A stretch of 64,000 bases of DNA, from positions 153,143 to 217,142 of the IMG/VR virus record IMGVR_UViG_3300042895_001344, one strand, 5' to 3'. The number at the start of each line of letters is the position of its first letter. The first letter of the stretch is position 1. Both the position numbers and the translations under genes were made by a program. Positions 46,198-60,577 of this stretch are shown piece after piece. Under the pieces are notes generated by a model. It saw only the letters and a program-made list of their open reading frames with translations. It was not told the origin of the DNA and ran no database searches.

Positions 46198-46228
46198 TCC
46201 TCGAGGTTTATACTTCGGGGATTTTTTT
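46198..46228 (+). terminator. Intrinsic terminator at the convergence with the envelope module
   Basis: TCCTCGAGG-TTATA-CTTCGGGGA plus T-run. Confidence 0.75.
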
Positions 46229-47835
46229 TATAATACCATTCTACTACCTATTTGGAAATTACTTAAAAAATCAGAAAATGGTTTGGTGTTTCCACTCATT
46301 TTGTAGTTTGCGGAGAACCCAAATCTCTTACTAATTTTATAATCAAATGCTGCACCTAATAAAAATCCCATATGTCTATTGACTGTTGTTACACCCGTTG
46401 CACTATTATAACTTATAGGTGCAAACATTGTAAATACCTGTGGTGATATTGTTAATTTTTTATTATACTGATAAGGTTTAGTCCAAAACACAATTGCAGA
46501 TGTAGCCATATTGTATTCAAACCCACCCGTCTCATCGTTTTTAAGTAATAGATTAATTACACCCACATTATAACCATATGTTCCTTTTTTTGCAGTTGGT
46601 TTGATGTATGTATATCCTAATAAATTCATATAGTTTCCACCTAAGTACGCAATTCCAGTTCCGTATGAATGTATTGCGTCTAATTGTCCATCTTCGGTCA
46701 TTCCCATTTTTGTTATACCACCCGTCATTACGATTGAACTTAAATTACTATTCACCATCAATCCAGCACTATAACTCACATCACCTGCTAACGATGATTT
46801 ACTAAGTCCTAATGATATAGACGCTAAGAAACTACCCGGAGTTGCTTCCATAACACTTATATCCGATGCCAATAGTGTTGGATTTGTTACCTCTTGTTTT
46901 TTCTTTTTTTCTTCTTCTTTTTTCTTTTCTTCCTCTTTCTTTTTCTCTTCCTCTTTTTTAGCTTCTTCTTTCTTCTCTTCTTCTTTTTTGGCTTCTTCCT
47001 TTTTCTCCTCAGTCTTTTTTTCTTCTGATTTCTTTTCTTCGGTTTTTGCTTCTTCTTTCTTTTCTTCTGTTTTAGCTTCAGTTTTCTTTTCTTCGGTTTT
47101 TTGTTCTGCAGGTTTGTCCGATTTAGTTTCAGCAGGTTTTGCCTCCGCGGGTTTTGCTTCAGCAGGTTTTGCTTCTGTTGATGATGAACTACCACCACTT
47201 GCAGGAGGTGGAGATGAACTACCACTTGCGGGTGGTGGTGCAGCTGCCGGTGGAGGTGCTGCCGTTGGTGGGGGTGCAGTGACTACGGGTGGTGGGGGTG
47301 GTGGTGCAATGTTTATTGGTGGTGGTGTTGCTGCATTTGCCGCTGCAGAACTTGCTGCCGCACTTGCCGATGAACTTGCTGCCGATGATGCCGATGAACT
47401 TGCAGCCTTTGCCGCAGCCTCTGCAGCCGCCTTTGCTGCAGCATCTGCGGCAGCTTTTGCGGCGGCGTCCGATGCCGCTTTTGCTGCGGCATCTGCAGCT
47501 GCCTTTGCGGCTGCGTCAGCGGCAGCTCTTGCTGCAGCATCTGCGGCAGCTCTCGCGGCAGCTTCTTGTGCCAATCTTATATTATCATTTATAGGACAAG
47601 GAGTTGAAAATATTGAATTTACCCATACTTGAAACGCACCACTACTCATGTCAGCTAATGTAACTATTTTAGATTTACCTCTAATAACTGCAACCGTTTG
47701 ATTTTGACCAAAGGGAATTGTTACCACATAGACTTTATTGTCACATGGATCAATATATGTTTGTGTTATAGTACTTTGACTAAACGACTTAACATAAAAA
47801 AATAATATTAGGAGAGAGATAATATATTTTTTCAT
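46228..47835 (-). CDS. Exported protein with a long Ala/Pro/Lys/Glu linker and C-terminal outer-membrane beta-barrel
   Basis: Signal peptide ...VKSFS|Q; AAADAAAK, poly-Pro and EEKK tracts; amphipathic strands; ISPQVF motif. Confidence 0.7.
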   Translation of the reverse strand: MKKYIISLLILFFYVKSFSQSTITQTYIDPCDNKVYVVTIPFGQNQTVAVIRGKSKIVTLADMSSGAFQVWVNSIFSTPCPINDNIRLAQEAAARAAADAAARAAADAAAKAAADAAAKAASDAAAKAAADAAAKAAAEAAAKAASSSASSAASSSASAAASSAAANAATPPPINIAPPPPPPVVTAPPPTAAPPPAAAPPPASGSSSPPPASGGSSSSTEAKPAEAKPAEAKPAETKSDKPAEQKTEEKKTEAKTEEKKEEAKTEEKKSEEKKTEEKKEEAKKEEEKKEEAKKEEEKKKEEEKKKEEEKKKKQEVTNPTLLASDISVMEATPGSFLASISLGLSKSSLAGDVSYSAGLMVNSNLSSIVMTGGITKMGMTEDGQLDAIHSYGTGIAYLGGNYMNLLGYTYIKPTAKKGTYGYNVGVINLLLKNDETGGFEYNMATSAIVFWTKPYQYNKKLTISPQVFTMFAPISYNSATGVTTVNRHMGFLLGAAFDYKISKRFGFSANYKMSGNTKPFSDFLSNFQIGSRMVL

Positions 47836-47841
47836 TATTCG

Positions 47842-48570
47842 TTATTCAAATTTTTCATTATAATCTTTTATTGTAAATGGACAATATACTGAATATCTAA
47901 TGTCTTTTGATAAGTTTTTAGTTACCTCATGTACGTAATTGTATTTTTGATGTTCAATCAACACACATTTATTAAAATTTGGTAAAACTTCTATTTCACC
48001 ATTTTTAGTATAAAGTTTTAATAATGACCCATCATCAAATTTTCTATCGTTGTTTATAAAAAATACAGCAGTAAATAATCTTTCACCATTTGGGTCACTA
48101 TCAAAATGTTTCTTAATAAATGATCCTTCTGGATATACATTTATATGACCAACTAATGAATCTTTAAAATTTGGTTTAATTTTTTTATTAAATAATTCAA
48201 ATAATATGTTTTCGTAACATTTAGATATTAGATCATAAATTCCATTAGTTTTTAACAAACTACTATTATGTGTTAATAAAAAATTAAAATAATCATTTTC
48301 ATTAAATCCATATTGATCATTTAATTTATTTAAAAAACAATAATCTGTATAATTCAATGAATATGAATCTACTATTTTATTGTATCTTATTGGATCTATT
48401 TCTTTAACTTTATTTTCCACATCATTTGACCATTGTAAAAACCCTAACGAGCTATTAATCTCATCAACATTTACGTCAAAATTAATTAATGATGTATTAA
48501 GTTTAACAAACTCATCTTTAGTAAGATAATTTTCTAAATCAAATATTTTATAGTCAAAATCTAAATTCAT
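47842..48570 (-). CDS. 2OG-Fe(II) oxygenase (prolyl-hydroxylase-like)
   Basis: HFD, GSLL, VHEV, RYS. Confidence 0.8.
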   Translation of the reverse strand: MNLDFDYKIFDLENYLTKDEFVKLNTSLINFDVNVDEINSSLGFLQWSNDVENKVKEIDPIRYNKIVDSYSLNYTDYCFLNKLNDQYGFNENDYFNFLLTHNSSLLKTNGIYDLISKCYENILFELFNKKIKPNFKDSLVGHINVYPEGSFIKKHFDSDPNGERLFTAVFFINNDRKFDDGSLLKLYTKNGEIEVLPNFNKCVLIEHQKYNYVHEVTKNLSKDIRYSVYCPFTIKDYNEKFE

Positions 48571-49415
48571 TATTTGTTATTTAAACCTATTGATATTTGT
48601 GTGTATCCTCTTATTGGGTCGGTATCTAATTTTAATGTAACGAATTTAAAATCTTTTATAATACCAACTTTAAATGTGGTAAATGATGAATTTGATTTTG
48701 GAAATGAAATACCACCTAAGTCATCTTTACCTTGCCATCTAATAACTTCATTACCAAATCCTACCATACCATGTATTCCTATTTTACCAATTCTTTTACC
48801 ACCACCAACATAGAAAGTTGATTCTTTTTTCCAATCTTCTTTACTAAGTGGAAAGTCGACATTGTTAATTTGACCATATGGATAATAGCTATTTTGGTCT
48901 ATTGCGTAAGTCATTACATAATCCATAATAAAATATCCTCTCTTGTCACCAATCGTTCCCCAATAAGAAATTTGTTTATTATTTGTATGTCCAAATCCAA
49001 AGGAGGTATAAACACGTTCTTTTCTAATAGTATCTCTTTTTCCACCTTCATATATATGAATTACACTTCTTTGTCTCCATCCGTAATCATCATACCAAAT
49101 ATAAGGCATTGGTTGATACCATCCCCAGTTTCCCCAATAGTAACCAAATTGATTATTTCTATTCCAATTTTGAACACGTACTCTACCACGTTGGTCTGGT
49201 TGTGATTGTTGAGGTTGATTATTTCTCCAACTACTTACATTATTTTGTTGTGGTACAGATGGTTGAACTCTTGTTTGAGTTGATTGTGATGTTTGTGATG
49301 ATGCTGGAACACTTCCACCAGTTTGTCTCCAAGAACTAACTTGGGAATATAACATTATTGTGCAGAATAATATTAATATTAATATTAAACCTGTAACTAA
49401 TAAAACCTTTTTCAT
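48570..49415 (-). CDS. Exported protein, probable small outer-membrane beta-barrel
   Basis: Signal peptide ...MLYS|Q; Gln-rich and aromatic low-complexity region; alternating Gly/aromatic strands. Confidence 0.55.
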   Translation of the reverse strand: MKKVLLVTGLILILILFCTIMLYSQVSSWRQTGGSVPASSQTSQSTQTRVQPSVPQQNNVSSWRNNQPQQSQPDQRGRVRVQNWNRNNQFGYYWGNWGWYQPMPYIWYDDYGWRQRSVIHIYEGGKRDTIRKERVYTSFGFGHTNNKQISYWGTIGDKRGYFIMDYVMTYAIDQNSYYPYGQINNVDFPLSKEDWKKESTFYVGGGKRIGKIGIHGMVGFGNEVIRWQGKDDLGGISFPKSNSSFTTFKVGIIKDFKFVTLKLDTDPIRGYTQISIGLNNK

Positions 49416-49591: not shown

Positions 49592-49595
49592 ATAA

Positions 49596-49603
49596 TATAA
49601 ATA
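49596..49603 (-). promoter_or_regulatory. TATTTATA putative late-promoter motif
   Basis: Just after a terminator and before pspC. Confidence 0.55.
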
Positions 49604-49607
49604 TTAA

Positions 49608-49631
49608 AAAAGGGGTTATAAAACCCCTTTT
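49608..49631 (-). terminator. Intrinsic terminator
   Basis: AAAAGGGGTT-4 nt-AACCCCTTTT. Confidence 0.75.
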
Positions 49632-49849
49632 AAACATATTCTATCTAATTCTTCTTGCCTTAAACCTATGGTTGAATCTATTTGTCCTCCGTCGGATAAA
49701 ATGTTTACTAAATAAAGACCAAATTTTTTATCACTTATCTCAATTTCTTGCCCATGTATAAACCCCATATCCATCAATTTTAATCTCATACATGGTGTAC
49801 AATTTTCACAAGGATTATTTTGTGGAACGTCCACTACTTCATATTTCAT
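49616..49849 (-). CDS. feoA: FeoA-like SH3 protein with an N-terminal CxxCxxC
   Basis: RLKLMDMGFIHGQEIEI...IGLRQEE. Confidence 0.7.
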   Translation of the reverse strand: MKYEVVDVPQNNPCENCTPCMRLKLMDMGFIHGQEIEISDKKFGLYLVNILSDGGQIDSTIGLRQEELDRICLKGVL

Positions 49850-50577
49850 TATTTCGTGAATATACCTTTTTTAATCATTCTATCAAGGATGTTAGCACAT
49901 GCAATGTCTAAAGCTTTCTTTGTTGCAATACTAATTGTTGATTGATTGAACTTAATTGGGTCAATGGTCGCATCCGATAAAAGGGTTAACTCTCTTTTTG
50001 TTGTTGCCTCACCTAAACCTGACCCACCAAATACTACACCTGTTTCAGCATCAGTAAATCTAACCTGAAGACCTATACGAGTTACCATATTGTCTTTAAT
50101 ACCGTCTTTTAGGTTAATAGTTTCGTCTTCTGACACCGAGTAGTCATAACACTCAATCGTAACAAAATACTTCGCCAAATTGATTTTACCACGACCGTCT
50201 AATTTATTCTCAGAAATACCCGCAGCAGACGCTTGGAATTGTTTTACCATCCTATTCTTAATTTCTGTCTTATCCTCGGTAAATTTGAATCTATTTAAGT
50301 TTTCAAGGTATTCCATTGAAATGTTAGCAACACCCAAACCAACACGTTTTTCTTTTAACTCAGGATACATTTCATACATCTCATCAGAAATGCCTGCCTT
50401 TAATATTTGAATTGGAATTTGAGGACCGTCGTAATCCATGTAAGCACTTATGTCTCGTTTTTTTTCAAAATCTGCTTTATACTGTTCGGTTTTTGTTGAT
50501 CCTATTGTTTGTCCCATTGCATTATCTGCAATTAAACAGGTTAAAATAAAAATTAAAAATATTATTAAATGTCTCAT
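49849..50577 (-). CDS. CsgG/HfaB-like exported protein
   Basis: Signal peptide ...NAMG|Q; GVANISMEYL.N.NRFKFTE; IGLQVRFTDAETGVV.G.G.G; C-terminal A.KKAL helix. Confidence 0.65.
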   Translation of the reverse strand: MRHLIIFLIFILTCLIADNAMGQTIGSTKTEQYKADFEKKRDISAYMDYDGPQIPIQILKAGISDEMYEMYPELKEKRVGLGVANISMEYLENLNRFKFTEDKTEIKNRMVKQFQASAAGISENKLDGRGKINLAKYFVTIECYDYSVSEDETINLKDGIKDNMVTRIGLQVRFTDAETGVVFGGSGLGEATTKRELTLLSDATIDPIKFNQSTISIATKKALDIACANILDRMIKKGIFTK

Positions 50578-50586
50578 AGTTTTATA

Positions 50587-51330
50587 TTAAGGGTTCCATT
50601 TATTTAATGCACTTATGTAGTTACTCGTCATATGATCTTTGGCAGTATTACCTGTGAATACAGCTTTAAGATATTCACCAACTCTTTGCCAATCAATCAT
50701 CCATTTTTTAACTTTACCCTCACTATCAATACGTAATTCAGTATTAACGTGGTGATATCCAATATTTGGGGCACGAGTAACAACATCTAAATTATTAACA
50801 ATCCTTAATGATTCAATTGATGATTTATCAAAGTTCTGTTTGAATACTTTATTACCAACTCTTGGACTACCGATAGTACAACATATAATTTTATTTGATT
50901 TATAAATTGAATAAATCTCATATGCACATAAGGTAGAAACTGCAGCTCCCAAACTGTGACCGCAAACAATAATATTATCAACTTCACCCTCCCCACCTAA
51001 TGTGGATAATGCTTTTTCAAATGATTTATAAGTTTCGTCTTTAACAGCGTCCCAAGATGATTTAAATCCAATGTGAACTTTTTCACCATCTTGAACAAAT
51101 GGAACTTTATCAATTGATGCGTCGTTTTGGAAATCCTTTTTAGAAGAACTTCCTCTCCAAACGATATAGATAGATTTATCCTTTGTGGCAACAAATCCTT
51201 GTGTATCTGTTTTTTTATCGTCAATCCATTTAATTAATTTTAATCTTTGTGCTTTAAAATCAATGTCTTTTTGTTCTGAATATACTTTCTCGGTTAAACC
51301 GACATTGTATAGTATTTCGTTTTTTGTCAT
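50587..51330 (-). CDS. Class-3 lipase (alpha/beta hydrolase)
   Basis: VWRGS, VHIGF, GHSLG, TIGSPRVG, VNNLDVVTRAP, Y.HV, DH. Confidence 0.92.
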   Translation of the reverse strand: MTKNEILYNVGLTEKVYSEQKDIDFKAQRLKLIKWIDDKKTDTQGFVATKDKSIYIVWRGSSSKKDFQNDASIDKVPFVQDGEKVHIGFKSSWDAVKDETYKSFEKALSTLGGEGEVDNIIVCGHSLGAAVSTLCAYEIYSIYKSNKIICCTIGSPRVGNKVFKQNFDKSSIESLRIVNNLDVVTRAPNIGYHHVNTELRIDSEGKVKKWMIDWQRVGEYLKAVFTGNTAKDHMTSNYISALNKWNP

Positions 51331-51354
51331 TGTGTATTTGTTTTTGTTATAATA

Positions 51355-51591: not shown

Positions 51592-51594
51592 AGT

Positions 51595-52668
51595 TTATTG
51601 TGTTTTTGTTTTAGATTGATCACCCTTCTTTAAAAATATATCAAATATTGTTTTAGGACTGTATTCTACAAGTAATATTAAACCCTTCCTCAACGTAGAG
51701 TTTTTTACAACGTGATTTAAAATATCTTTAATAACCTCTTTAATGGCGAAATTTTTAGTGTCAAAATATGTTCCATCAAAATATCTTGGACTTGTTCCCT
51801 CACCACCTGGTGAACCGTGATGAGCACCTATAGAGGTACGCCAATAATCAGCATGATTTTGCCATTCAGGAACTGAAACCAATTCAGGTGAATCAAAAAA
51901 TAAATTCCACGATAATACATTACCCTTTTGTAACATATTACCAGTACCTAAGTTAAAAAGATTTAAAAAGTATTGATTAAACTTATCTAATTTGTGATCA
52001 CTTGTTGTTACCATTCCTCCTATTTCTACATTGATATGTCCTGTACTATATGCTTCTTCCTTTATTGCAAATTCAGGATTTTTAAATCTTGGTGATAAAC
52101 CCTTTCCGAGTTGAAATATAGGTTCTTTAGGATTTCCTGGTAGATGTGTTAAAACACGAATAGCATTTTCTTTGTTGATAGGATACTTACGAGAACTGTA
52201 TTTTAATAATGGCCAAATTGCTCTTAATAGACCACCTTGATTTTCACCTGGTGTTAACCAAATTTTTCCCTCAACCATCATATCCGCAGCAATTTCCTTT
52301 GTGTCTTCATTAACCCATCCTCTTTGTCCCGTAACTGTTACTTCCACATTGATACAAATCTCATCTCCAATCCACATCCCTTGTTGAGGACAGATTATGG
52401 AATAAATTCTACCTTCATTGGTATATCCTATTCTTGAAATATAAGGAGCAAATTGTACATAACAACGTTTTGGGTCTTTTTCCCCATTTAGGGTATTCCA
52501 ACTAAACATTGGCCATTTAACACCCCATTGTCTTTGTAGTAAATTAATGTTATCCATATTACCCAACATAGGTAATGAGGTTAAATCTGTGGTAGGATAT
52601 AGCATTTTCTTTTGTTTTTCAGATGGAAAACCACCTTGCCATCCCGTAGGAATTTGTTCGTTTGTCAT
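51595..52668 (-). CDS. Hypothetical protein
   Basis: 357-aa ORF; TATTTATA at 52679-52686 upstream. Confidence 0.7.
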   Translation of the reverse strand: MTNEQIPTGWQGGFPSEKQKKMLYPTTDLTSLPMLGNMDNINLLQRQWGVKWPMFSWNTLNGEKDPKRCYVQFAPYISRIGYTNEGRIYSIICPQQGMWIGDEICINVEVTVTGQRGWVNEDTKEIAADMMVEGKIWLTPGENQGGLLRAIWPLLKYSSRKYPINKENAIRVLTHLPGNPKEPIFQLGKGLSPRFKNPEFAIKEEAYSTGHINVEIGGMVTTSDHKLDKFNQYFLNLFNLGTGNMLQKGNVLSWNLFFDSPELVSVPEWQNHADYWRTSIGAHHGSPGGEGTSPRYFDGTYFDTKNFAIKEVIKDILNHVVKNSTLRKGLILLVEYSPKTIFDIFLKKGDQSKTKTQ

Positions 52669-52691
52669 ATTCTTTTAATATAAATACACAA

Positions 52692-52716
52692 AAAAGGGAG
52701 TTTTTAACTCCCTTTT
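52692..52716 (-). terminator. Intrinsic terminator
   Basis: AAAAGGGAGTT-TTT-AACTCCCTTTT. Confidence 0.8.
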
Positions 52717-52719
52717 ATA

Positions 52720-52968
52720 CTAACCTTCTGTTTCTTCTTTCTTTTTGTGAGAGAATTTATCCAAAGTATCTGCACCCATTCCAATTCCCGTGATTAACAT
52801 CACCGCATTCACCAATTCAGGTGATGGAGCGAAATCCGCGTGAGAGAACGAATTTAAAATCATCGTAATACATAGGAATAAAGCACCTATCATTGCTATT
52901 ACCGGCTTTACCGATATTGATCCTCTTTCATCTTTGAAAATTTCAATAACCCATTGTTTAAAATTCAT
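52720..52968 (-). CDS. Two-TM small membrane protein (holin-like)
   Basis: Two hydrophobic helices, charged C-terminal tail. Confidence 0.55.
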   Translation of the reverse strand: MNFKQWVIEIFKDERGSISVKPVIAMIGALFLCITMILNSFSHADFAPSPELVNAVMLITGIGMGADTLDKFSHKKKEETEG

Positions 52969-52997: not shown

Positions 52998-53666
52998 TTA
53001 TCCTTCCGTATGCATTTCTGCATTTTCATCTTTAATTTTACCACATTTTAAACACTCCTCAATGCCATCACCATCCAAGTCACCCCAAACGTGTTCACAT
53101 TGTCTATGTGCGAAATACATATCTATTTTACCGTCACCATCAAAATCAATACCATCTATTGTACCATCACCATCTTCATCAACCTCAACACCTGTTCTTG
53201 GTTGTGATTTGAAAGGACTTTCAACAACTTGAGGATTATTTGGTTCTGATTTTACCTCTACTTTGTTTGCCTCAATTAAGTTGATTTCATGTGCGTTCTT
53301 TGCGGCTTGCACAAATGCATCTGGAATCAATGGAGTGTTATTTGGTGGAGTTACAGGCATATCAGCAGTATTACTCATTGACGTACCATCTTCTTCGTCC
53401 ATTTTCTGAACTAACATCTTATCCTTATCAGTATCACTAAACCAATAGTCAATGATTTTACCATAACTACCGATAAACGCTCCTAATAATAATAAAAGAA
53501 GTTCTTTCCATTCTCCTTCAATCGTAGATTTATTTAATATACCAAAGAACATTCCTCCAATAATAATCATAAATCCACCTAACACTATCGCAGTGATATA
53601 CCACCTGCGTTTCATCATATTTGCTAATAAATCCTTAAATCCGCTTGGCGGTTGTTCATTACTCAT
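52998..53666 (-). CDS. Two-TM membrane protein with DxDGDG Ca-binding-like repeats and a CxHxW...CxxC tail
   Basis: DEDGDGTIDGIDFDGDGKID; CEHVWGDLDGDGIEECLKCG. Confidence 0.65.
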   Translation of the reverse strand: MSNEQPPSGFKDLLANMMKRRWYITAIVLGGFMIIIGGMFFGILNKSTIEGEWKELLLLLLGAFIGSYGKIIDYWFSDTDKDKMLVQKMDEEDGTSMSNTADMPVTPPNNTPLIPDAFVQAAKNAHEINLIEANKVEVKSEPNNPQVVESPFKSQPRTGVEVDEDGDGTIDGIDFDGDGKIDMYFAHRQCEHVWGDLDGDGIEECLKCGKIKDENAEMHTEG

Positions 53667-53683: not shown

Positions 53684-53998
53684 TTACCATTTAGGTGCTT
53701 CTTCTTTAAACTCATCACCTTCTTTTTTCTTAGGTTTTGGTGCTGGCGCCGGTTTAGCACTACCGTCTCCACCTTTATTGATGATTACAGTTTTACCACC
53801 ACCCGATTGTTGAGTTTGTGAATTGGTAATGTTGATTACAGGTGCCGCTTGTTGAACGGGAGCCTCTTTTTCGTCACCACCTGTTAATTTTGTTGTAAAC
53901 CAACCACCCACACCTAATGTGATGGTGCTTACTAAACCGATAATGATGTTCTTAATTGAACCACCTGTACTTTCTGATTTTTCTTGTTCTTCTGCCAT
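53684..53998 (-). CDS. Single-TM protein with a Pro/Gly/Lys-rich tail
   Basis: IIIGLVSTITLGVGGWF followed by low-complexity sequence. Confidence 0.65.
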   Translation of the reverse strand: MAEEQEKSESTGGSIKNIIIGLVSTITLGVGGWFTTKLTGGDEKEAPVQQAAPVINITNSQTQQSGGGKTVIINKGGDGSAKPAPAPKPKKKEGDEFKEEAPKW

Positions 53999-54030: not shown

Positions 54031-54399
54031 TTAAATTTTATTAAAATCTGTAATTCCTAACATATTACCCGCAACATCGTATAATGCAATCCTATACGCT
54101 GAAGATGGTAAAGCGGATGTATACACCCTTAAAATGTTATCACCAACCTTAACCTCACTTGTTGATTTTGATACCACTCTATTGGAAATATCAAAAATCT
54201 TAACGGTTACAGTTTGAGCAACATCACTTTTTATGTTCATTGCAACTTCATTTGTTATAAATGAAGTTTCTAATTTTAATCCCACTGAACTTGAGATTTT
54301 AAGGTTGTCACTAATCACTTGTGGTTGCATTGGTATGTCTACTTTTCTACATCCAACAAGTAAGATTAATCCAAAGAGTACGAGAGATACTTTTTTCAT
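54031..54399 (-). CDS. Lipoprotein consisting of a T9SS-CTD-like Ig domain
   Basis: LVGC lipobox; VTVKIFDISNRVV...G.N.L.V.TSALPSSAYRIAL. Confidence 0.6.
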   Translation of the reverse strand: MKKVSLVLFGLILLVGCRKVDIPMQPQVISDNLKISSSVGLKLETSFITNEVAMNIKSDVAQTVTVKIFDISNRVVSKSTSEVKVGDNILRVYTSALPSSAYRIALYDVAGNMLGITDFNKI

Positions 54400-54411
54400 T
54401 TTTTGTCTTGT

Positions 54412-54765
54412 TTAATTTATAATTATTCTTGTTTTACCTATTTGATTATTATTTTGATCCTTTAACACGACACTTAGGTTTTTTGTCGGTAAAGTATTAG
54501 TAAATATTTTAAGAGAGTTTAATCCTACTTTACCAGTAAACCTTTCCCTTGATACTACTTGGTTTTGAACCGTATCAATCATTGTTAAAGTATATACTCC
54601 TCCTGTAGTTAAATTAATATTAATAACATCCCCGTTTTTTACCTTATTTTCAGATAAGGAGAAAAATTCCACATTTGTCGGTGACACAGGTGTAAACGGA
54701 ACCATTTTTTTGCACGATATTATAAAAACCATACAACACAATAATATAATTTTGATACGTTTCAT
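54412..54765 (-). CDS. Lipoprotein paralog with a T9SS-CTD-like domain
   Basis: IISC lipobox; YTLTMID...VV...G.NSLKIFTNTLP. Confidence 0.55.
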   Translation of the reverse strand: MKRIKIILLCCMVFIISCKKMVPFTPVSPTNVEFFSLSENKVKNGDVININLTTGGVYTLTMIDTVQNQVVSRERFTGKVGLNSLKIFTNTLPTKNLSVVLKDQNNNQIGKTRIIIN

Positions 54766-54768
54766 ATT

Positions 54769-55662
54769 TTAAAATTGAAAGTTTGTTCCTATCATAAATA
54801 GAATTGGATTACTCTTTTTATACCCAACCGATTCACTTAATTTATTCCAAGTTGTGTTATATCTAACATTAGTATTCAATACAAATTTTTTAGTTATTTT
54901 CCAATCAATAGATGTACCATAATATAAGTCCAAATTGAAATCATCTACATATGCTAAATCCGATTCAGTCCCATCTTTGAATACTTTGTAGATATCACTC
55001 ATTGCAAATATTTGTGGTGAGATGTTTACTCTCTTTGTTTTGAATGTATACGTATACATTGCCATACCTCTATAACTAATTTGACTTGATGATGGCATTT
55101 GTGGATATATTAAATCTTTAAAATCACCATTTTCATCTACTATATATTTTCCTTCCCATTGACCTTGATAACTTCCCCAAAACGATTTTGACGCAATCAC
55201 ACTATAACCAAATGTTCCAAACTTTTTAGTTCTGAATACATCAATGAATGATAGAGAAATATCTTTTTGAAAATCAAAATCGGTTGAATAGAATGATTGT
55301 AATGTAGTAGTTCTTGTATTCGTATTTCTACTGAAACCATAACCCACACCATAGTAGTTCCATATTGGATTTATTGATGATGCGAATGAGTGACCCCATT
55401 TACCATTTTTAGATGATTTACTATATCCTAAATTTAAGGTAGTAGATACTTGTTTTCCAATTACACCTACTGATAAATTTGAGGATGAAAGAACATCTTT
55501 TGAAAAATCAATATATGACTCTAATATACCTAAATTATTCCAATCACCACTTTCTCCAAATAATTCTTTTGGTGATAGTTGTAAGGTATCTGGTTTTACA
55601 ATTTGTGCGTTTGTAACAAATGTTGTCAAAATTAGTGACAGAATTAATAATAGTTTTTTCAT
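54769..55662 (-). CDS. Outer-membrane beta-barrel protein
   Basis: Signal peptide ...VTNA|Q; amphipathic strands; ISPQIF; C-terminal Phe (GTNFQF). Confidence 0.75.
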   Translation of the reverse strand: MKKLLLILSLILTTFVTNAQIVKPDTLQLSPKELFGESGDWNNLGILESYIDFSKDVLSSSNLSVGVIGKQVSTTLNLGYSKSSKNGKWGHSFASSINPIWNYYGVGYGFSRNTNTRTTTLQSFYSTDFDFQKDISLSFIDVFRTKKFGTFGYSVIASKSFWGSYQGQWEGKYIVDENGDFKDLIYPQMPSSSQISYRGMAMYTYTFKTKRVNISPQIFAMSDIYKVFKDGTESDLAYVDDFNLDLYYGTSIDWKITKKFVLNTNVRYNTTWNKLSESVGYKKSNPILFMIGTNFQF

Positions 55663-58271
55663 TAATTTATTTTTATTTTTAATGATTTTCCATCTTTATT
55701 AACTGCGTCCGTTGAACCTATTGAAATTAAACCCAATATGTTATCCAATTTTGTGTTTGACGAAAATGAAATCTTATATGTTGTTGTCTTATCTAAACTT
55801 GTACTACCATCACTTACCAAAGAACCTAAATTAATGTAATTACCCTTGTTGGTTGCATAGTTGGTAGGTGAACCTTTTGTGGTAAATTGTATTCCTTTAA
55901 AATTTAAGACCGAATTATCGTAGTTTAATTGAAATTGAGTTCCTACCACGTTTTGTTGTAATGGGTCAAATGTGATGTAAGCATAAACACTATCACCAAT
56001 TACTTCGGTCATAATAGATGCGTTGATGTCAGTTGATATTGGTGTACTCATTGATGTTCTAACTGTCATCGTTGTGATATTATTTGATGGAGGAGTTGCC
56101 GAATGTGATAAGTTTACATCACCTTTCCAACTAACAGCCAAATCGTAGTTATAACTTATTACATTATCTAATAAACTAAAATTATAAGTTTTTCCTGCAA
56201 AATTTTGAAAAGAACTCCAAGTTGACTTACCAATTTTATTATAAATTGAATCAGGTATCAAACGTATTGTATTATCCAAAGTATAATTACTAACTAAGTT
56301 TTGTACACCCGTTAAATTTTGTAATAATTTGAAACAATCCGCTTCATTAAATAAACCATCATCATTTACATCTGCGTTTTTATATTGAATTCCGTAAGTA
56401 AACTCATTACCACTTTGATTTCCAAATATACCACCATTTGCCAATTCCTTAAATGCCAAATACACATCTGATACTGTTACGATACTATTATACAAAGTTT
56501 TTAATTGTGTACTATCATATTCTTGTAATTCCATTTTGTGTTGTTTGAACGCACCTTGTTGGGTAAGTCCAATACCACATGCAAATGCATAGTCGGTATT
56601 TGAACCATTCATATTTCTAATATATTGATTATATGCAGAAGTTCCATCGGTTACTTTTGTTAATGGAGATGGAACAGTATATTGTGCCCAACCATTATTG
56701 TCATGTGATGTATATGTAACAGGCCCATCATACGCATCTAATATTTTTACATTTGATATTTTCGTTGGGTCTATACTTCCAACTTGTCTCATATCAATTA
56801 ACAATCTACTATTACCATTTAACCAACTTGCATTTGGATTTGTATAAGACCACTCTACCCCACCCGGAGATATAGTTGCTTTGTATGATGCAGGTGCCGA
56901 TACGAATTGGTAACTTAATCCCCATCCACCATAACCCGATGTTGATACTCCATTACGAGTTGAACCAACATATTCACTTAACCCCTGTACTACTTTAATA
57001 TAAACTTCTTTTGTTTGTCCGTCTGATATTACACCAGCATGTACCGCTGCGGCTGGAATATATGAATCACTTGTATAGATATCGGTTCCCCATATTGCTC
57101 CACCTGTTGTACCTGTTATTGTTATTCTATATATCTTACCAATATCCGATTCATTAAATTGTTGCATATCGGATGTTCCTGCTGTTAATGGAATACCAGT
57201 TGTATAAATCTTTGAAGTATCTATTTGATTTGAAAGAAATACTTTACCCAAACCACTCAATGATTTATAACCATCCGCCGCTGCCCAATTTGAATATGTG
57301 TCGTTTCTTTTGAATATCTGTGCTAAGAATTTTGTTTTATCTATTGAAGTATTAAACTTAAATCCAAATAATGCTTTTATAGTTTCTCCGTTTGAATGTG
57401 TTACTGAATTGGTATAGAACTCCGTAAATGTTGCATCATCGGGATTAGACCAAGTTCCATATTCAATTACATATGGGTTACTCCAATTGTTTGATAAGTC
57501 ATTCCATTGATTACCATTCCATTTTGTTACTGCATAATCCTCACTATGATTATATCCGTTTGGTTCACCATTTGCCCAATTATTATACACACCTGGTCGG
57601 TTTCCGGCAGTTGGTCCGTTGGATGTTTTCATCACAGTCCCCTTTTCAGGACCCGCATCAATTACCCAAGTTCCATCTATAACTTCATCTGTTGCTGCAA
57701 ACCATATATTTGATTGTGGTACATTAGCTTGAATAAATAAATCTTCCGATGATGATGTTAGTGTTAATAGATAACCCGTCTGTCCTTTGAATGTTGTTGT
57801 TAACGCAATTGCTCTTGCGTTTGTATAAGTTGTACCGGTTGTTACGGGTTTGTAAAAGTGACCATTTACTCCATTGAAATAATATCCTGGTTGATTAACA
57901 GTTGCGGCCACTGAAATATTAATATCACCAATTACTGTTCCTGTGTTTATTTTTAGAGACGCTAACGCAGTATTAATACTTGCCATTGTTCCAGTTACCA
58001 CTAAACGAGTTTTATTACCACTTAAAGTAAATCCACTTGCTGCCGTTAAACCCGTTGTTGTGTTTAATACGAATGTTGTACCTGATGGTGGATTGACTAA
58101 ACTTATAGAAGCAAGTAAAGTAGATGTTGCACCAAATCCACTTAATGAAAATCCACTAGCGTCTTGTCCTGTGGTATTCACAGTAAATGATTTAGGGTCT
58201 GGAGCCGTTACTGACTGACCAAACCCTAAAAATGATATAAATAAAAATAATACTACTAATAGTTTCTTCAT
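55662..58271 (-). CDS. Exported adhesin-like protein: C-type lectin + LCCL + dockerin-like + cohesin-like domains
   Basis: Signal peptide ...LGFG|Q; GYLLTLTS.SE, WANGEPN, WNDL; IWGTDIYTSDS.I.AAAVHAG; ADVNDDG; GTQFQLNYD. Confidence 0.8.
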   Translation of the reverse strand: MKKLLVVLFLFISFLGFGQSVTAPDPKSFTVNTTGQDASGFSLSGFGATSTLLASISLVNPPSGTTFVLNTTTGLTAASGFTLSGNKTRLVVTGTMASINTALASLKINTGTVIGDINISVAATVNQPGYYFNGVNGHFYKPVTTGTTYTNARAIALTTTFKGQTGYLLTLTSSSEDLFIQANVPQSNIWFAATDEVIDGTWVIDAGPEKGTVMKTSNGPTAGNRPGVYNNWANGEPNGYNHSEDYAVTKWNGNQWNDLSNNWSNPYVIEYGTWSNPDDATFTEFYTNSVTHSNGETIKALFGFKFNTSIDKTKFLAQIFKRNDTYSNWAAADGYKSLSGLGKVFLSNQIDTSKIYTTGIPLTAGTSDMQQFNESDIGKIYRITITGTTGGAIWGTDIYTSDSYIPAAAVHAGVISDGQTKEVYIKVVQGLSEYVGSTRNGVSTSGYGGWGLSYQFVSAPASYKATISPGGVEWSYTNPNASWLNGNSRLLIDMRQVGSIDPTKISNVKILDAYDGPVTYTSHDNNGWAQYTVPSPLTKVTDGTSAYNQYIRNMNGSNTDYAFACGIGLTQQGAFKQHKMELQEYDSTQLKTLYNSIVTVSDVYLAFKELANGGIFGNQSGNEFTYGIQYKNADVNDDGLFNEADCFKLLQNLTGVQNLVSNYTLDNTIRLIPDSIYNKIGKSTWSSFQNFAGKTYNFSLLDNVISYNYDLAVSWKGDVNLSHSATPPSNNITTMTVRTSMSTPISTDINASIMTEVIGDSVYAYITFDPLQQNVVGTQFQLNYDNSVLNFKGIQFTTKGSPTNYATNKGNYINLGSLVSDGSTSLDKTTTYKISFSSNTKLDNILGLISIGSTDAVNKDGKSLKIKIN

Positions 58272-58274
58272 AAA

Positions 58275-59927
58275 TTATTCAACAATCAAATTAATCTTGT
58301 TTCCGTTTCCATCAACCGCGTCAGCTAAAACTGTATAAAATAAACCCGCCGTATTTGTTATGGTTTCTTTCGGTATAAAAGTTAATTTGTAAGGTGTCCC
58401 TATTTTAATTCTACCAGTTTTCATTTGATCCATTGAACCGAATGTTAATCTACCATCTCCATTTGTTGAGAAGTTAGTTACGTTTGGACCGGCGTCAAAT
58501 GATATATTATCAAATGTTAATTTTGAATTGTCATATTGTAAGATTACCTCTAATCCCGCTAATCCGTCTTTTGTTAATGTTCCCGTTAATACAACTTTAC
58601 CATTAACAATTGTAGAGTTTAATCCTAATGTTGCCTTTTCAATTGTTGGTGTATATGACATTGATTGAACTGAAAATGATTTGATTGATGAGGTACTTTT
58701 TTCATTAATTGAGTTTAAGTAAGTTCCTGCTGCAATTCTACTTGCGATTACATCAGGGTCAGATGAATGAGACCAATCCAAATCACCACCCCATGCGTAT
58801 ACCATATCTACCGATTGATTTGATGATGTTACTTTTGTTTTGTAAGTAGGTACACCATCTAACCAACTTTGATTTAATAAACCACTATACCATTTGAATA
58901 AACCACTATTTGTACTCAATGGAATCCATGCACTATCTTTTACATTAGCGATACCCATTACATATGCAAACATATAATATGAATCACTTTCACTAAACAC
59001 ACTTTTACTCTTTGTAATTTGACCTATATTCTTTTGTAATTGTGGTCTTGTAAAATAAGTTTTTACACCCGCGATATCCGTTTGTGAAATACCTAAAAAT
59101 GCTTTATATGCGTCTGATACTGTTATAATGTTATTCATAAAAGTTTTTCCTGTTGCACCATACATCCACACCGCCAAACTATCTCCCACTTTCACTTCTG
59201 TTGTAAATGTCGCCTCACCACTTGCATCTAATACTTTTGTTGCAATTGGTGTTACTGTAAAATCAATTGTACCATCTGTTTTTATTGGAAATAATGCAAC
59301 ACTGTGTGCGGTAATATCATATCCTGTTGGGAATAAAACTCTTAGTTTGAACTGAGACGTATTACCAACAACATTTGTTAAAGACATTGTACCTGGATCA
59401 GTTGTAATTGGTGTAATGTATGCACTTGTTGCATCAATTGAATATGATAAGTCTAATTTATGAATGTCGGTATACGCACCCAAATCTTTGATTACATATT
59501 TTTGAGTTGCAACATCTCCGTTGATAGATGCATCGGTTCTTTGAACAGTTAATTGACCAACATTCCAATCTGCGTTGGCTGCGTAACCCCATGGAGATAT
59601 TAGATATTGTGCATATAAATCTTTAGCTGTAATACTATTTGCTGCACTTGAAGTAAATTTATAAGACGACCAACCTGTGTAGAATGTTTGAACTGATGTT
59701 CCTTGTGAGAACGTCGTTGAAACATATGAAAGTGCCTTATTGTTAAATTGATATCTCAACCAAAAATAACGAGGCGTGGTTGTACCTCTCGCAACCGTGT
59801 ATTTAACTGAAACCGTATCACCAACCTTTAACCCTGTTGTAGGTGTCACAGATTGGTTGACAGTTAATTGTGCATTTGTTGCTATGGATATTACTAGTAT
59901 TCCAAGTAGCGTTAATAGTTTTTTCAT
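58275..59927 (-). CDS. Exported protein with dockerin-like and cohesin-like domains, paralog of 55662..58271
   Basis: Signal peptide ...ATNA|Q; ITVSDAY; GGDLDWSHS; GLEVILQYDNSKLTF. Confidence 0.7.
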   Translation of the reverse strand: MKKLLTLLGILVISIATNAQLTVNQSVTPTTGLKVGDTVSVKYTVARGTTTPRYFWLRYQFNNKALSYVSTTFSQGTSVQTFYTGWSSYKFTSSAANSITAKDLYAQYLISPWGYAANADWNVGQLTVQRTDASINGDVATQKYVIKDLGAYTDIHKLDLSYSIDATSAYITPITTDPGTMSLTNVVGNTSQFKLRVLFPTGYDITAHSVALFPIKTDGTIDFTVTPIATKVLDASGEATFTTEVKVGDSLAVWMYGATGKTFMNNIITVSDAYKAFLGISQTDIAGVKTYFTRPQLQKNIGQITKSKSVFSESDSYYMFAYVMGIANVKDSAWIPLSTNSGLFKWYSGLLNQSWLDGVPTYKTKVTSSNQSVDMVYAWGGDLDWSHSSDPDVIASRIAAGTYLNSINEKSTSSIKSFSVQSMSYTPTIEKATLGLNSTIVNGKVVLTGTLTKDGLAGLEVILQYDNSKLTFDNISFDAGPNVTNFSTNGDGRLTFGSMDQMKTGRIKIGTPYKLTFIPKETITNTAGLFYTVLADAVDGNGNKINLIVE

Positions 59928-59929
59928 AG

Positions 59930-60577
59930 TTATTTAACAAATAATTTAGTTATTAATTTATCCGCCGATTTTTTTAAGGCGTTACTAAGTGACGTTTGAT
60001 TAAATTGACCTCCCTCATCAACAATTAATGTTGACATTGATATTTCTGAAGATGATTCTTCGACCATTATTTCCTTTTCTTTTTTACCATCCTTATATAA
60101 AGTTCCTTTCATACGAATGACAACTTCTTCTTCATTTTTGTGAAAAACAGAAATGTTCTTTTTTGTTGTAAGAACATCTAAATAAATGATTTGAACTTTT
60201 AATTTGTATGGGGCTGAAGGTGTTAAATCATAACCCTTTTCTTGTAAGAATTCTTCCAATGTATTTTTTACACCGAAAGCTAAATTTCTATTACCTGCCA
60301 ATTTACCCATCTTAACTTCATTGGTAACACTCTCCACCCAAATATGGTCTTCAGCCACATAGAATATATTTTCAGGTGAGTTCTTGAATGTACCATCAAT
60401 CCTCCACGAAATCCAATTTGAGATGTCTCTTGTTATTTCTCTTTGGCCTGAAAATTCCAAAACCGCCATGGATATACCGAATATCATTCCAAATATTACC
60501 CATGATATCGCAAAGTATAAAAAACCTAAAAAGATTTTTTCTTTAATATTAATTGATAGTGTTCTTAATTTTTCCAT
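59930..60577 (-). CDS. Membrane-anchored CsgG-like protein (paralog of 49849..50577)
   Basis: N-terminal TM helix; LAFGVKNTLEEFL; FNQTSLSNALKK. Confidence 0.55.
   Translation of the reverse strand: MEKLRTLSINIKEKIFLGFLYFAISWVIFGMIFGISMAVLEFSGQREITRDISNWISWRIDGTFKNSPENIFYVAEDHIWVESVTNEVKMGKLAGNRNLAFGVKNTLEEFLQEKGYDLTPSAPYKLKVQIIYLDVLTTKKNISVFHKNEEEVVIRMKGTLYKDGKKEKEIMVEESSSEISMSTLIVDEGGQFNQTSLSNALKKSADKLITKLFVK

What the first reader, a model, noticed from the sequence alone, without database searches (positions are those of the whole stretch)
46228..60577. The envelope module is built from four paralog pairs
Seen by direct comparison. CsgG-like pair: LAFGVKNTLEEFL / VGLGVANISMEYL and FNQTSLSNALKK / FNQSTISIATKK. 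Barrel pair: ISPQVFTM / ISPQIFAM and GAAFDYKISKRF / GTSIDWKITKKF. Adhesin pair: IVTVSDVYLAF / IITVSDAYKAF, WKGDVNLSHS / WGGDLDWSHS, GTQFQLNYDNS / GLEVILQYDNS and DAVNKDGK / DAVDGNGN. The two CTD-like lipoproteins are adjacent. Inference: a heteromeric machine with two related subunits at each position, or two parallel subsystems from an old duplication.
Basis: seen in the sequence. Interest (0 to 1): 0.75.

Follow-up and report, generated by a model that had tools for sequence, protein, structure and literature searches.

The report
Phage-encoded host envelope gene module
A large T4-like phage of freshwater Bacteroidota carries a conserved 14-kb block of genes for exported membrane, lipoprotein and sugar-binding adhesin proteins. 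Three of its four claimed "gene pairs" are true duplicates, but relatives that get by with single copies show the pairs are not an obligate two-by-two machine.

Summary
The window is the last 64 kb of a 217-kb IMG/VR contig from a T4-like jumbo phage; relatives reach about 335 kb. Region 46228-60577 is a minus-strand block encoding exported envelope proteins.

**The four claimed pairs**
- Adhesin pair C1/C2: confirmed (hhalign E 2.6e-26).
- Lipoprotein pair D1/D2: confirmed (E 1.3e-19).
- Barrel pair B1/B2: confirmed (E 7.5e-11).
- "CsgG-like" pair: not significant by sequence (probability 19-43%). The two proteins probably share only the CsgG/LptE/YajG fold class.

**Distribution in relatives**
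- More than 100 related phage contigs carry the module, as does the cultured Flavobacterium phage immuto (gp013-gp019).
- G1 and G2 always co-occur.
- B2 is missing in 14 of 55 relatives that keep B1.
- Distant relatives have one adhesin, one lipoprotein and one barrel.
- So the pairs are lineage-specific duplications, not a required heteromer at each position.

**Likely function**
The signal peptides follow the Bacteroidetes Q-rule. A late-type promoter motif precedes each of the three transcription units. The adhesins carry swappable lectin heads on a conserved dockerin/cohesin-like tail. In immuto the cohesin domain is fused to a genuine T9SS sorting domain. My best reading is a late-expressed module that remodels the surface of the infected cell. 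That function is inferred and has not been tested.

The parts
60665..60672 (-). TATTTATA late-promoter-like motif, 88 nt upstream of G1. Proposed start of transcription unit 1.
   Evidence: The same motif sits just upstream of the portal, TerL and the large structural genes. Of 63 copies in the genome, 33 lie in the 4.9% that is intergenic, and 35 are sense-upstream of a gene versus 10 for the reverse-orientation control.
59930..60577 (-). G1: 215 aa with an N-terminal transmembrane anchor and a periplasmic YajG/Lipoprotein_16-like domain.
   Evidence: Pfam PF03923 at 24.7 bits, E 2.2e-5. 33 of 39 family members hit it. Always present together with G2.
58275..59927 (-). C2: 550-aa exported adhesin-like protein. 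Its C-terminal ~290 aa are paralogous to C1, and its dockerin-like calcium loop is degenerate.
   Evidence: C2 forms one clade with 99% support.
55662..58271 (-). C1: 869-aa exported adhesin-like protein. It has a C-type lectin domain (164-268), an LCCL domain (391-450), a dockerin-like EF-hand loop (~605-649) and a cohesin-like domain (~759-824).
   Evidence: Pfam. Family scan finds Cohesin in 10 of 21 members, and the variable heads are Lectin_C, PA14, LCCL or GLEYA. A PDB profile search matches cohesins at E 1.3e-5.
54769..55662 (-). B2: 297-aa outer-membrane beta-barrel candidate ending in ...NFQF. Residues 57-296 are paralogous to the B1 barrel.
   Evidence: The AF2 model is all-beta with about 13 strands but low confidence (pLDDT 54.6). 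Fold hits are generic OM barrels such as NanC, TamA, BamA and EspP. The family has only 29 representatives among 1.84 billion.
54412..54765 (-). D2: 117-aa lipoprotein with a beta-sandwich that resembles a T9SS CTD.
   Evidence: The lipobox Cys is invariant in the family alignment. Paralogous to D1.
54031..54399 (-). D1: 122-aa lipoprotein with a CTD-like or DUF3244-like beta-sandwich.
   Evidence: Pfam DUF3244 E 6e-4 and Por_Secre_tail E 0.019, both below cut-off. TIGR04183 E 0.005. Family scan.
53684..53998 (-). g09: 104-aa single-pass membrane protein with a Pro/Lys-rich tail. It is a conserved core member of the module.
   Evidence: Present in 50 of 55 relatives and in immuto as gp016, E 7.5e-19.
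52998..53666 (-). g08: 222-aa membrane protein with two hydrophobic helices, an Asp-rich DxDxDG stretch and a Cys cluster.
   Evidence: Sequence. Present in 44 of 55 relatives. No Pfam or PHROG match.
52720..52968 (-). g07: 82-aa protein of unknown function, the last gene of transcription unit 1.
   Evidence: present in 33 of 55 relatives.
52679..52716 (-). Intrinsic-terminator hairpin (52716-52692) followed directly by a TATTTATA motif (52686-52679). This marks the boundary between transcription units 1 and 2.
51595..52668 (-). g06: 357-aa variable cargo gene with no signal peptide and no family match.
   Evidence: Seen in only a minority of relatives.
50587..51330 (-). Class-3 lipase with a GHSLG motif and no signal peptide. 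A variable cargo gene.
   Evidence: Pfam Lipase_3 E 2.6e-27. Present in 13 of 55 relatives.
49849..50577 (-). G2: 242-aa exported protein with a CsgG-like fold. It is highly conserved and is not a lipoprotein (signal peptidase I site ...MG|Q).
49596..49631 (-). Terminator hairpin (49631-49608) followed by a TATTTATA motif (49603-49596). This marks the boundary between transcription units 2 and 3.
48570..49415 (-). X281: 281-aa exported protein rich in Gln, Trp, Tyr and Gly, of unknown function.
   Evidence: Present in 28 of 55 relatives. Shows no relation to B1 or B2.
47842..48570 (-). 2OG-Fe(II) oxygenase, a rare cargo gene.
   Evidence: Pfam PF13640 E 4.6e-9. Present in few relatives.
46228..47835 (-). 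B1: 535 aa. It has a signal peptide, a small Cys-containing N-domain (TYIDPC), a ~250-aa Ala-, Pro- and Lys/Glu-rich linker, and a C-terminal beta-barrel (residues 320-534).
   Evidence: This barrel type is the one kept in the minimal modules and in immuto gp018.

Best explanation
Region 46228-60577 is an accessory gene module of a T4-like jumbo phage that infects Bacteroidota. It encodes proteins exported into the host cell envelope.

Conserved core:
- G1, a membrane-anchored YajG-like protein.
- One or two lectin-headed adhesins (C) with a conserved dockerin-like plus cohesin-like tail.
- One or two small CTD-like lipoproteins (D), matched in copy number to C.
- g09, a small membrane protein.
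- G2, a CsgG-fold protein.
- One or two outer-membrane beta-barrels (B).

Evolution: the C1/C2, D1/D2 and B1/B2 pairs arose by duplication within one sub-lineage. G1 and G2 are old, distinct components that at most share a fold class.

Proposed mechanism (inferred, not shown):
1. The module is transcribed late, from three units that carry the promoter motif seen upstream of structural genes.
2. The proteins are exported by Sec.
3. G2, the barrel or barrels, G1 and g09 form or assist an outer-membrane platform.
4. The lectin adhesins are displayed on that platform or tethered to it through their cohesin/dockerin-like tails and the CTD-like partners.
5. This changes what the infected cell or its debris sticks to. 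Possible outcomes are receptor masking or exclusion, or clumping with fresh hosts or particles.
For: Phage identity:
- gp23-type capsid protein, gp20 portal and TerL in the window.
- The window lies in a virus record of 217 kb.

Export into the envelope:
- Nine or ten exported proteins cluster here.
- All six signal peptidase I sites are followed by Gln, which is the Bacteroidetes Q-rule (PMC5837995; precedent in phages PMC10367356).
- The lipobox Cys is invariant in the D family.
- B2 is all-beta, ends in Phe and matches OM barrels.
- G2 has the CsgG fold.

Host:
- The cultured relative immuto infects Flavobacterium.
- MAG hits are in Sediminibacterium and Flavobacterium.

Conservation and core:
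-.
- Immuto gp013-gp019 holds lectin, cohesin, g09, G2, B1-like and G1-like genes.

Adhesin character:
- Lectin_C, PA14, LCCL and GLEYA heads are swapped on a conserved tail.
- The tail matches cohesins and, weakly, dockerins.

Link between C and D, and to the T9SS:
- Their copy numbers are coupled.
- Immuto gp015 fuses a cohesin domain to a Por_Secre_tail CTD that scores above the Pfam cut-off.

Late expression:
- The TATTTATA motif and the terminator-motif cassettes.
Against: - No experiment or direct localisation supports any of this.
- Signal peptides were judged by eye; no predictor was run.
- The B2 model has low confidence.
- G2 lacks the lipid anchor that CsgG has, and no oligomer was tested.
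- D1 and D2 score below threshold for the T9SS sorting domain.
- The promoter class is inferred from one motif. Its timing was not measured.
- RNA-library fragments do not prove transcription.
- A lipase here, and an endolysin inside the module in one relative, fit a lysis role equally well.
- Only 65% of the genome is available.
Confidence: 0.5

Rival explanations
1. The module is a superinfection-exclusion or receptor-masking system. Outer-membrane and periplasmic proteins of the TraT, Llp or Cor type, together with lectins that bind the host's own surface glycans, would block adsorption of other phages, or of progeny to infected cells and debris. This overlaps with the best explanation but commits to one outcome.
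For: - The lectin heads are hypervariable while the tails are conserved, as expected for parts that track host surface diversity.
- The module is phage-specific. G1 was not found in 400 sampled Bacteroidota genomes.
Against: - Classic exclusion proteins are single small genes expressed early, whereas this is a 9-15-gene block with a late-type motif.
- The available 217 kb holds no paralog of the lectin heads, in the tail genes or elsewhere.
Confidence: 0.2
2. The module is a lysis or envelope-disruption cassette. g08 and g09 would act as holin-like membrane proteins, D1/D2 and G1 as spanin-like outer- and inner-membrane partners, and the lipase (or an endolysin in relatives) as the degradative enzyme.
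For: - The late-type promoter motif.
- A class-3 lipase inside the block.
- A GH19-like endolysin inserted between the D-like gene and g09 in L124.
- Small membrane proteins and lipoproteins lying side by side.
Against: - Lectin, cohesin, LCCL and PA14 adhesins and a CsgG-fold protein have no place in known lysis systems.
- The D proteins are folded beta-sandwiches, unlike the short Pro-rich o-spanins.
- The lipase and endolysin are sporadic cargo (13 of 55 relatives and 1 locus respectively).
- A second cluster of small exported and membrane proteins at genome positions 79.8-84.0 kb, also with late motifs, is a more ordinary lysis candidate.
- Immuto's annotated endolysin lies about 8 kb away.
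Confidence: 0.12
3. One reading: an obligate heteromeric machine with two related subunits at each of four positions, or two parallel subsystems created by one old block duplication.
For: - Three true paralog pairs.
- C and D are duplicated together.
- After duplication, C1 keeps an intact calcium-binding dockerin-like loop while C2 has lost it. This could reflect division of labour within a C1-C2 complex.
Against: - B2 is lost in 14 of 55 relatives that keep B1.
- Modules with single C, single D and single B exist, including in a cultured phage.
- G1/G2 is not a demonstrable paralog pair, and both members are present even in the minimal modules.
- L025 has B2 together with a single C, so the duplications were not one event.
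Confidence: 0.08
4. The adhesin-like proteins are virion decorations or fibres, and the apparent signal peptides are not used for export.
For: - Lectin and Ig-like domains are common on phage fibres and heads (PMC7824862).
- The promoter motif is the one shared with structural genes.
Against: - Q-rule cleavage sites, invariant lipoboxes, a beta-barrel with a C-terminal Phe and a T9SS sorting domain in immuto gp015 all point to export.
- The block lies outside the structural region, next to tRNAs and accessory genes.
- There are no PHROG structural matches.
Confidence: 0.07

Closest known systems
Flavobacterium phage vB_FspM_immuto gp013-gp019 (NC_055915, Immutovirus; cultured on Flavobacterium sp. 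LMO8)
   Same: - Same gene set in compact form: lectin protein, cohesin protein, g09 homologue, G2 homologue (55% identity), B1-like barrel with the TYTDPC N-domain, and a G1-like protein.
- All signal peptides are followed by Gln.
- The phage has a T4-type capsid.
   Different: - The genome is 160 kb.
- The adhesin functions are split over three smaller genes.
- The cohesin domain is fused to a genuine T9SS CTD instead of being followed by separate CTD-like lipoproteins.
- The G1-like protein has a cleavable signal peptide and lies after the barrel.
- There are no duplicated pairs.
- The genes are annotated only as hypothetical, lectin or cohesin proteins.
CsgG curli secretion channel (also HfaB, PelC and LptE of the same fold class)
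   Different: - No Pfam CsgG match.
- No lipobox.
- No csgE, csgF or curlin-like genes nearby.
- Oligomeric state and membrane hairpins were not tested.
- G1 matches YajG rather than CsgG.
T9SS cargo with C-terminal sorting domains, and cohesin-dockerin assemblies (cellulosome-type scaffolds)
   Same: - Bacteroidota host.
- CTD-like beta-sandwich in D1 and D2.
- A real CTD fused to a cohesin domain in immuto gp015.
- Cohesin-like and EF-hand dockerin-like segments in the tail of C.
   Different: - In this window the CTD-like unit is a free-standing lipoprotein, not the C-terminus of a cargo protein, and it scores below the family cut-offs.
- The dockerin-like part has one calcium loop rather than the duplicated pair.
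- No binding has been shown.
Phage and plasmid outer-membrane 'moron' or exclusion proteins (lambda Lom and Bor, T5 Llp, F TraT)
   Same: They are phage-borne exported outer-membrane barrels and lipoproteins that alter the host surface. The fold of TraT is related to that of G1 and G2 (the comparison with Lom, Bor and Llp rests on general knowledge).
   Different: Those are single genes, often from temperate elements or expressed early. This is a conserved multi-gene block in lytic T4-like phages, with lectin adhesins and a late-type promoter motif.

Membership tests
CsgG family (PF03783) - tested on G2 | Sequence match to the family model | tested here: not met
   No Pfam hit at E <= 1. No NCBIfam hit. 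A PDB profile search found nothing. The only sequence-derived leads are language-model feature hits.
CsgG family (PF03783) - tested on G2 | The CsgG alpha/beta fold | tested here: met
CsgG family (PF03783) - tested on G2 | N-terminal lipobox cysteine (an outer-membrane lipoprotein) | tested here: not met
   The family alignment has no conserved Cys after the signal peptide. Gln at +1 is nearly invariant, which indicates a signal peptidase I site.
CsgG family (PF03783) - tested on G2 | Nonameric ring with transmembrane beta-hairpins, and partner genes csgE, csgF and curlins | not tested
   No oligomer was predicted. No curli-type partner turned up in the Pfam scans of the block.
YajG / Lipoprotein_16 (PF03923) - tested on G1 | Sequence match to the family model at its cut-off | tested here: inconclusive
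   24.7 bits against a cut-off of 25. 33 of 39 family members match at E <= 0.1, best 7.1e-6.
YajG / Lipoprotein_16 (PF03923) - tested on G1 | Lipoprotein signal | tested here: not met
   G1 has a long N-terminal hydrophobic anchor and no lipobox. The immuto homologue has a cleavable signal peptide.
Paralog pair G1/G2 | Significant sequence or profile similarity between the two proteins | tested here: inconclusive
   BLASTP E 0.018. hhalign 18.9% and 43%. No HMM cross-hits. Immuto gp019 hits both HMMs, at 25 and 13 bits. The G2 model matches the AlphaFold model of YajG at E 1.3e-4.
Paralog pairs C1/C2, D1/D2 and B1/B2 | Significant profile-profile similarity over a whole domain | tested here: met
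   hhalign E 2.6e-26, 1.3e-19 and 7.5e-11 respectively. HMM cross-hits number 216, 214 and 106 ORFs.
T9SS type A sorting domain (PF18962 / TIGR04183) - tested on D1 and D2 | Match at the family cut-off and a position at the C-terminus of a cargo protein | tested here: not met
   D1 scores 15.7 bits against a cut-off of 27. 4 of 19 family members match, best E 1e-3. The domain makes up the whole lipoprotein. The feature is met only in immuto gp015, at 34.6 bits.
Cohesin (PF00963) - tested on the C-terminal domain of C1 and C2 | Match to the cohesin model | tested here: inconclusive
   C1 scores 21.5 bits against a cut-off of 24.1. 10 of 21 family members match, best 3.4e-7. The family profile hits PDB cohesins at E 1.3e-5 and 3.7e-4. 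The immuto gp015 cohesin domain aligns to it at 93% probability.
Dockerin (PF00404) - tested on C1 residues ~605-649 | Duplicated 22-residue calcium-binding segments | tested here: not met
   Only one DxNxDGxxxxxD loop is present, with E 0.11 and PDB dockerin matches at E 0.03-0.06. The loop is degenerate in C2.
Outer-membrane beta-barrel protein - tested on B1 and B2 | All-beta transmembrane barrel with a C-terminal aromatic residue | tested here: inconclusive
   The B2 model has about 13 long strands but pLDDT 54.6. Fold hits are generic barrels with TM-scores of 0.34-0.48. B2 ends in F while B1 ends in L. No Pfam barrel family matches.
Phage spanin/holin lysis cassette | Adjacent holin, endolysin, i-spanin and o-spanin genes | tested here: not met
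   There is no endolysin in the block. The 217 kb holds no homologue of the GH19-like endolysin found in L124. No PHROG lysis families match.

The most novel reading that the evidence does not exclude
Late in infection, an abundant clade of T4-like Bacteroidota phages installs its own outer-membrane platform in the host: a CsgG-fold ring plus a beta-barrel, anchored from the inner membrane by G1 and g09. On this platform it builds a cellulosome-like scaffold of interchangeable lectin adhesins, joined by cohesin/dockerin-like modules and handled through the T9SS or CTD-like partners. The infected cell or its remains would then be glued to fresh hosts or particles, a phage-driven 'flocculation' strategy, or would act as a decoy.
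Probability: 0.2. Interest if true: 0.8.

Novelty: new variant of a known kind. Interest (0 to 1): 0.55.

Why it matters
Single phage genes that alter the host surface are well known. A conserved, multi-component, envelope-targeted module in lytic jumbo phages has not been described in the papers I could search.

The phage clade is very abundant in lakes. There are more than 6,500 90%-identity clusters of G2 alone, and the region is held in at least 16 lake metagenome runs. Whatever the module does, it therefore acts on a large share of infections of freshwater Bacteroidota.

A cultured phage-host pair, immuto and Flavobacterium sp. LMO8, carries the compact version. The function is therefore directly testable.

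For the finding itself, the lesson is more modest. Three pairs are ordinary lineage-specific duplications, and the fourth is a shared fold class.

Tried and rejected
- **Complex prediction on the C1 and C2 C-terminal domains:** score 0.20 against a mark of 0.32, so no verdict. This is not evidence either way.
- **PHROGs:** no match for any core protein.
- **PDB sequence-profile searches:** nothing for G2 or B2.
- **The search for homologous proteins with the G2 profile:** the results were saturated by thousands of near-identical phage proteins and gave no distant relatives.
- **Distant B2 relatives P0137 and P0147:** they lie on contigs of 1.4-2.4 kb, so there is no usable context. The partial upstream ORF in L142 starts with a B1-like YTYTDPC motif.
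- **Bacterial counterparts in 400 sampled Bacteroidota genomes:** G1 was found only in the MAG that carries a phage contig. The C tail gave only partial cohesin-like or dockerin-like matches in giant proteins.
- **Capsid genes in the two MAGs with the module:** none found. The contig shares other genes with this phage, so it is probably a binned phage fragment.
- **Megablast of the region against GenBank phages:** no match.
- **Paralogs of the adhesin heads, the B1 N-domain, X281 or g06 elsewhere in the 217 kb:** none.
- **Enlarged G1 and G2 profiles:** they raised hhalign only to 43%.
- **Metatranscriptome contigs:** short pieces 90-99% identical to the module genes were found in four lake runs, but DNA carry-over cannot be excluded.
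- **The 'moraphage' lineage (PMC12619734):** considered as the identity of this clade and rejected, because the paper places moraphages outside the T4 group.

Full report
**What the window is.** The window is the last 64 kb of a 217,142-bp IMG/VR virus record that CheckV rates 65% complete. It carries a gp23-type major capsid protein, a gp20-type portal and a T4-type large terminase. It also carries a cluster of five tRNAs and RNA-repair genes. Related contigs reach 333-335 kb. This is therefore a T4-like jumbo phage with about 30% GC.

**Anatomy of the region.** From 60577 down to 46228, every gene lies on the minus strand. I use these names:
- G1: 59930-60577
- C2: 58275-59927
- C1: 55662-58271
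- B2: 54769-55662
- D2: 54412-54765
- D1: 54031-54399
- g09, g08 and g07
- g06 and a class-3 lipase
- G2: 49849-50577
- X281
- a 2OG-Fe(II) oxygenase
- B1: 46228-47835

A crude genome-wide scan shows that exported proteins concentrate here and in one other small cluster. B1, X281, G2, B2, C1 and C2 have classical signal peptides, each followed by Gln. D1 and D2 have lipoboxes. G1, g08 and g09 have membrane helices.

**Checking the four pairs.** All the quoted motifs are in the sequences. I collected about 137 related loci from IMG/VR, built a family alignment for each gene, and compared all families with hhalign.
- C1/C2: 99.7% probability, E 2.6e-26, over the C-terminal ~280 residues.
- D1/D2: 99.2%, E 1.3e-19.
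- B1/B2: 97.1%, E 7.5e-11, covering B1 residues 320-534 and B2 residues 57-296.
- Every other family pair fell to the level of signal-peptide matches.
- At the HMM-to-sequence level, 216, 214 and 106 ORFs hit both members of the C, D and B pairs. None hit both G1 and G2.

For G1/G2 specifically:
- BLASTP gives E 0.018 over 16 residues.
- hhalign gives 18.9%, or 43% with enlarged profiles, and only over the C-terminal helix.

So three pairs are confirmed, and the fourth is not confirmed as a paralog pair.

**What G1 and G2 are.**
- G2 folds with moderate confidence (pLDDT 75.7).
- Among Swiss-Prot models the best match is the Neisseria lipoprotein NMB1126/NMB1164 (E 8e-12), then CsgG and YajG.
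- G2 has no Pfam CsgG match.
- Unlike CsgG it has no lipobox. The family consensus shows a signal peptidase I site with Gln at +1.
- G1 has an N-terminal membrane anchor and a domain that matches Pfam YajG/Lipoprotein_16 just under the cut-off. 33 of 39 family members match it.
- Since the G2 model also matches the YajG model, the two proteins probably share one fold class.
- The G1-like protein of phage immuto (gp019) hits the G1 HMM at 25 bits.

I read this as distant relatedness within a superfamily, not as a duplication within this module.

**What the other parts are.**
- B2: the model is all-beta with about 13 long strands and ends in ...NFQF, but it has low confidence. It matches only generic outer-membrane barrels. 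The family is tiny, with 29 representatives among 1.84 billion proteins.
- B1: the same barrel sits behind a small Cys-containing N-domain and a ~250-residue linker rich in Ala, Pro and Lys/Glu.
- C proteins: these are modular. C1 has C-type lectin and LCCL domains. Across relatives the heads are Lectin_C, PA14, LCCL or GLEYA, while the tail is conserved. The tail profile matches solved cohesins (E 1.3e-5) and, weakly, dockerins. C1 keeps a canonical calcium-binding loop that C2 has lost.
- D1 and D2: small lipoproteins with an invariant lipobox Cys. Their beta-sandwich resembles the T9SS sorting domain but scores below the cut-offs.

**Comparative genomics.** The block is conserved in more than 100 viral contigs. 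In 55 dereplicated loci with enough flanking sequence:
- B1 and B2 are both present in 34.
- B1 alone is present in 14. In these loci C1 abuts D2 with no gene between them.
- B2 alone is present in 7. Some of these may simply be truncated.
- No locus lacks a barrel altogether.
- Two C and two D genes occur in 45 loci.

G1 and G2 always co-occur, 42/42 and 58/58. More distant relatives have one C, one D-like lipoprotein directly after it and one B1-type barrel, and still have both G1 and G2. L025 has a single C but does have B2. In a tree of the C tails, C2 forms one clade (99% support) and the single-copy forms make another. The C, D and B pairs are therefore lineage-specific duplications, and the C and D copy numbers are coupled. 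This argues against an obligate heteromer at each position and against a single block duplication.

**A cultured relative.** Flavobacterium phage vB_FspM_immuto (160 kb, host Flavobacterium sp. LMO8) has a G2 homologue at 55% identity and a related capsid protein. Around that homologue lie:

| Gene | Content |
|---|---|
| gp013 | signal peptide + C-type lectin |
| gp014 | exported protein, unknown function |
| gp015 | signal peptide + cohesin + T9SS Por_Secre_tail domain (34.6 bits, above the cut-off of 27) |
| gp016 | g09 homologue |
| gp017 | G2 homologue |
| gp018 | B1-like barrel protein |
| gp019 | G1-like protein |

The fusion of a cohesin domain to a real sorting domain, where this window has a cohesin-tailed adhesin followed by CTD-like lipoproteins, is gene-fusion evidence that C and D work together. 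It also ties the module to T9SS-type surface display.

**Host.** Several lines point to Bacteroidota:
- The Gln after every signal peptidase I site is the Bacteroidetes Q-rule (PMC5837995). It has been noted before in Bacteroidota phage proteins (PMC10367356).
- The immuto host is a Flavobacterium.
- MAG hits lie in Sediminibacterium, Flavobacterium and Flavobacteriaceae.

The G1 family was not found in 400 sampled Bacteroidota genomes, apart from one MAG that holds a phage contig. The intact C tail was not found in them either. As far as I searched, the module is phage-specific.

**Transcription.** The octamer TATTTATA occurs 63 times in the 217 kb.
- 33 copies lie in the 4.9% of the genome that is intergenic.
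- 35 lie in sense orientation within 150 nt upstream of a gene, against 10 for the reverse-orientation control.
- The motif precedes the portal, TerL and many very large, presumably structural, genes.

Within the block it occurs upstream of G1. It also occurs directly after terminator-like hairpins upstream of g06 and of X281. That gives three transcription units: G1 to g07, g06-lipase-G2, and X281-oxygenase-B1. I infer late expression from this, but the timing has not been measured. Short pieces of the genes appear in contigs from four lake metatranscriptome runs, which does not prove transcription.

**Interpretation.**
- Best supported: a late-expressed, Sec-exported module that builds or modifies a structure in the outer envelope of the infected cell and presents interchangeable lectin adhesins.
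- Consequence for the phage: masking or exclusion, or clumping with new hosts. This is open.
- Lysis role: a weaker rival, suggested by the lipase here and by an endolysin inside the module in one relative.
- Virion role: unlikely, given the export signals.
- C1/C2 heterodimer prediction: no verdict.

**Novelty.** The duplications themselves are ordinary. The module matches no described system in the libraries and papers I could search. The clade that carries it is very abundant in lakes. The existence of a cultured carrier makes it testable.

Noticed in passing
window 503-60672 (e.g. 32550-32557, 34384-34391, 52679-52686, 49596-49603, 60665-60672): TATTTATA, read in the sense of the downstream gene, behaves like this phage's late promoter. 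It is strongly enriched in intergenic DNA and sits upstream of the portal, TerL and the large structural genes. At three sites it directly follows a terminator hairpin. It is the reverse complement of the T4 late consensus TATAAATA.
   Followed up: partly
L159 5749-11631 (NC_055915 10527-16409): The cultured Flavobacterium phage immuto carries a compact version of the module (gp013-gp019). It includes a protein that fuses a cohesin domain to a T9SS sorting domain.
   Followed up: yes
L023 13887-14111, L066 13053-13280, L008 5706-5918 and about 20 other loci: In many relatives a 68-78-aa gene lies next to G2. It matches only the N-terminal membrane piece of G1 (W[KR]IDGxFKNNPDNIWYEGP), while the G1 gene proper is shorter. 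This looks like a domain fission that links the G1 anchor to G2.
   Followed up: partly
L124 13014-13613: One relative has a GH19-like endolysin inserted inside the module, between the D-like lipoprotein and g09. No homologue of it exists in the 217 kb held for this phage.
   Followed up: partly
window 40199-40325: Two copies of GACAACTTGTCAT lie in the divergent intergenic region upstream of the ClpB-like ATPase gene. They could be an operator or an early promoter element.
   Followed up: no
window 43515-45733 and 61694-62893: An RNA-repair gene set (a PNK-like ATPase, a T4 Rnl1-type RNA ligase and a cREC_REC protein) lies near a cluster of five tRNA genes (Thr, Asn, Met, Ser, Glu).
   Followed up: no
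window 46880-47640: The B1 linker is extreme low-complexity sequence: AAAKAAADAAA repeats, then poly-Pro, then Lys/Glu-rich repeats. It produces spurious long ORFs on both strands.
   Followed up: no
genome positions 79863-83968 (outside the window): A second small cluster of membrane, signal-peptide and lipoprotein genes lies here, two of them preceded by the late motif. It is a more ordinary candidate for the lysis cassette.
   Followed up: no
window 47842-48570 and 60773-61555: Two Fe(II)/2-oxoglutarate-type oxygenases sit within or beside the module: a 2OG-FeII_Oxy_3 protein and a PhyH protein. The first is a rare insert among relatives.
   Followed up: no
L025, L124, L137, L144, L145 (C-terminal ends of the single-copy adhesins); L159 5749-6747: The single-copy C proteins carry an extra C-terminal strand ending ...IKLTGYNNF. 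Immuto gp013 ends ...ITRVGYNN. This motif resembles an outer-membrane beta-signal and is absent from C1 and C2.
   Followed up: no
window 25362-27119: The major capsid protein is 585 aa. The gp23 domain covers only residues ~307-569, so there is a long N-terminal extension.
   Followed up: no
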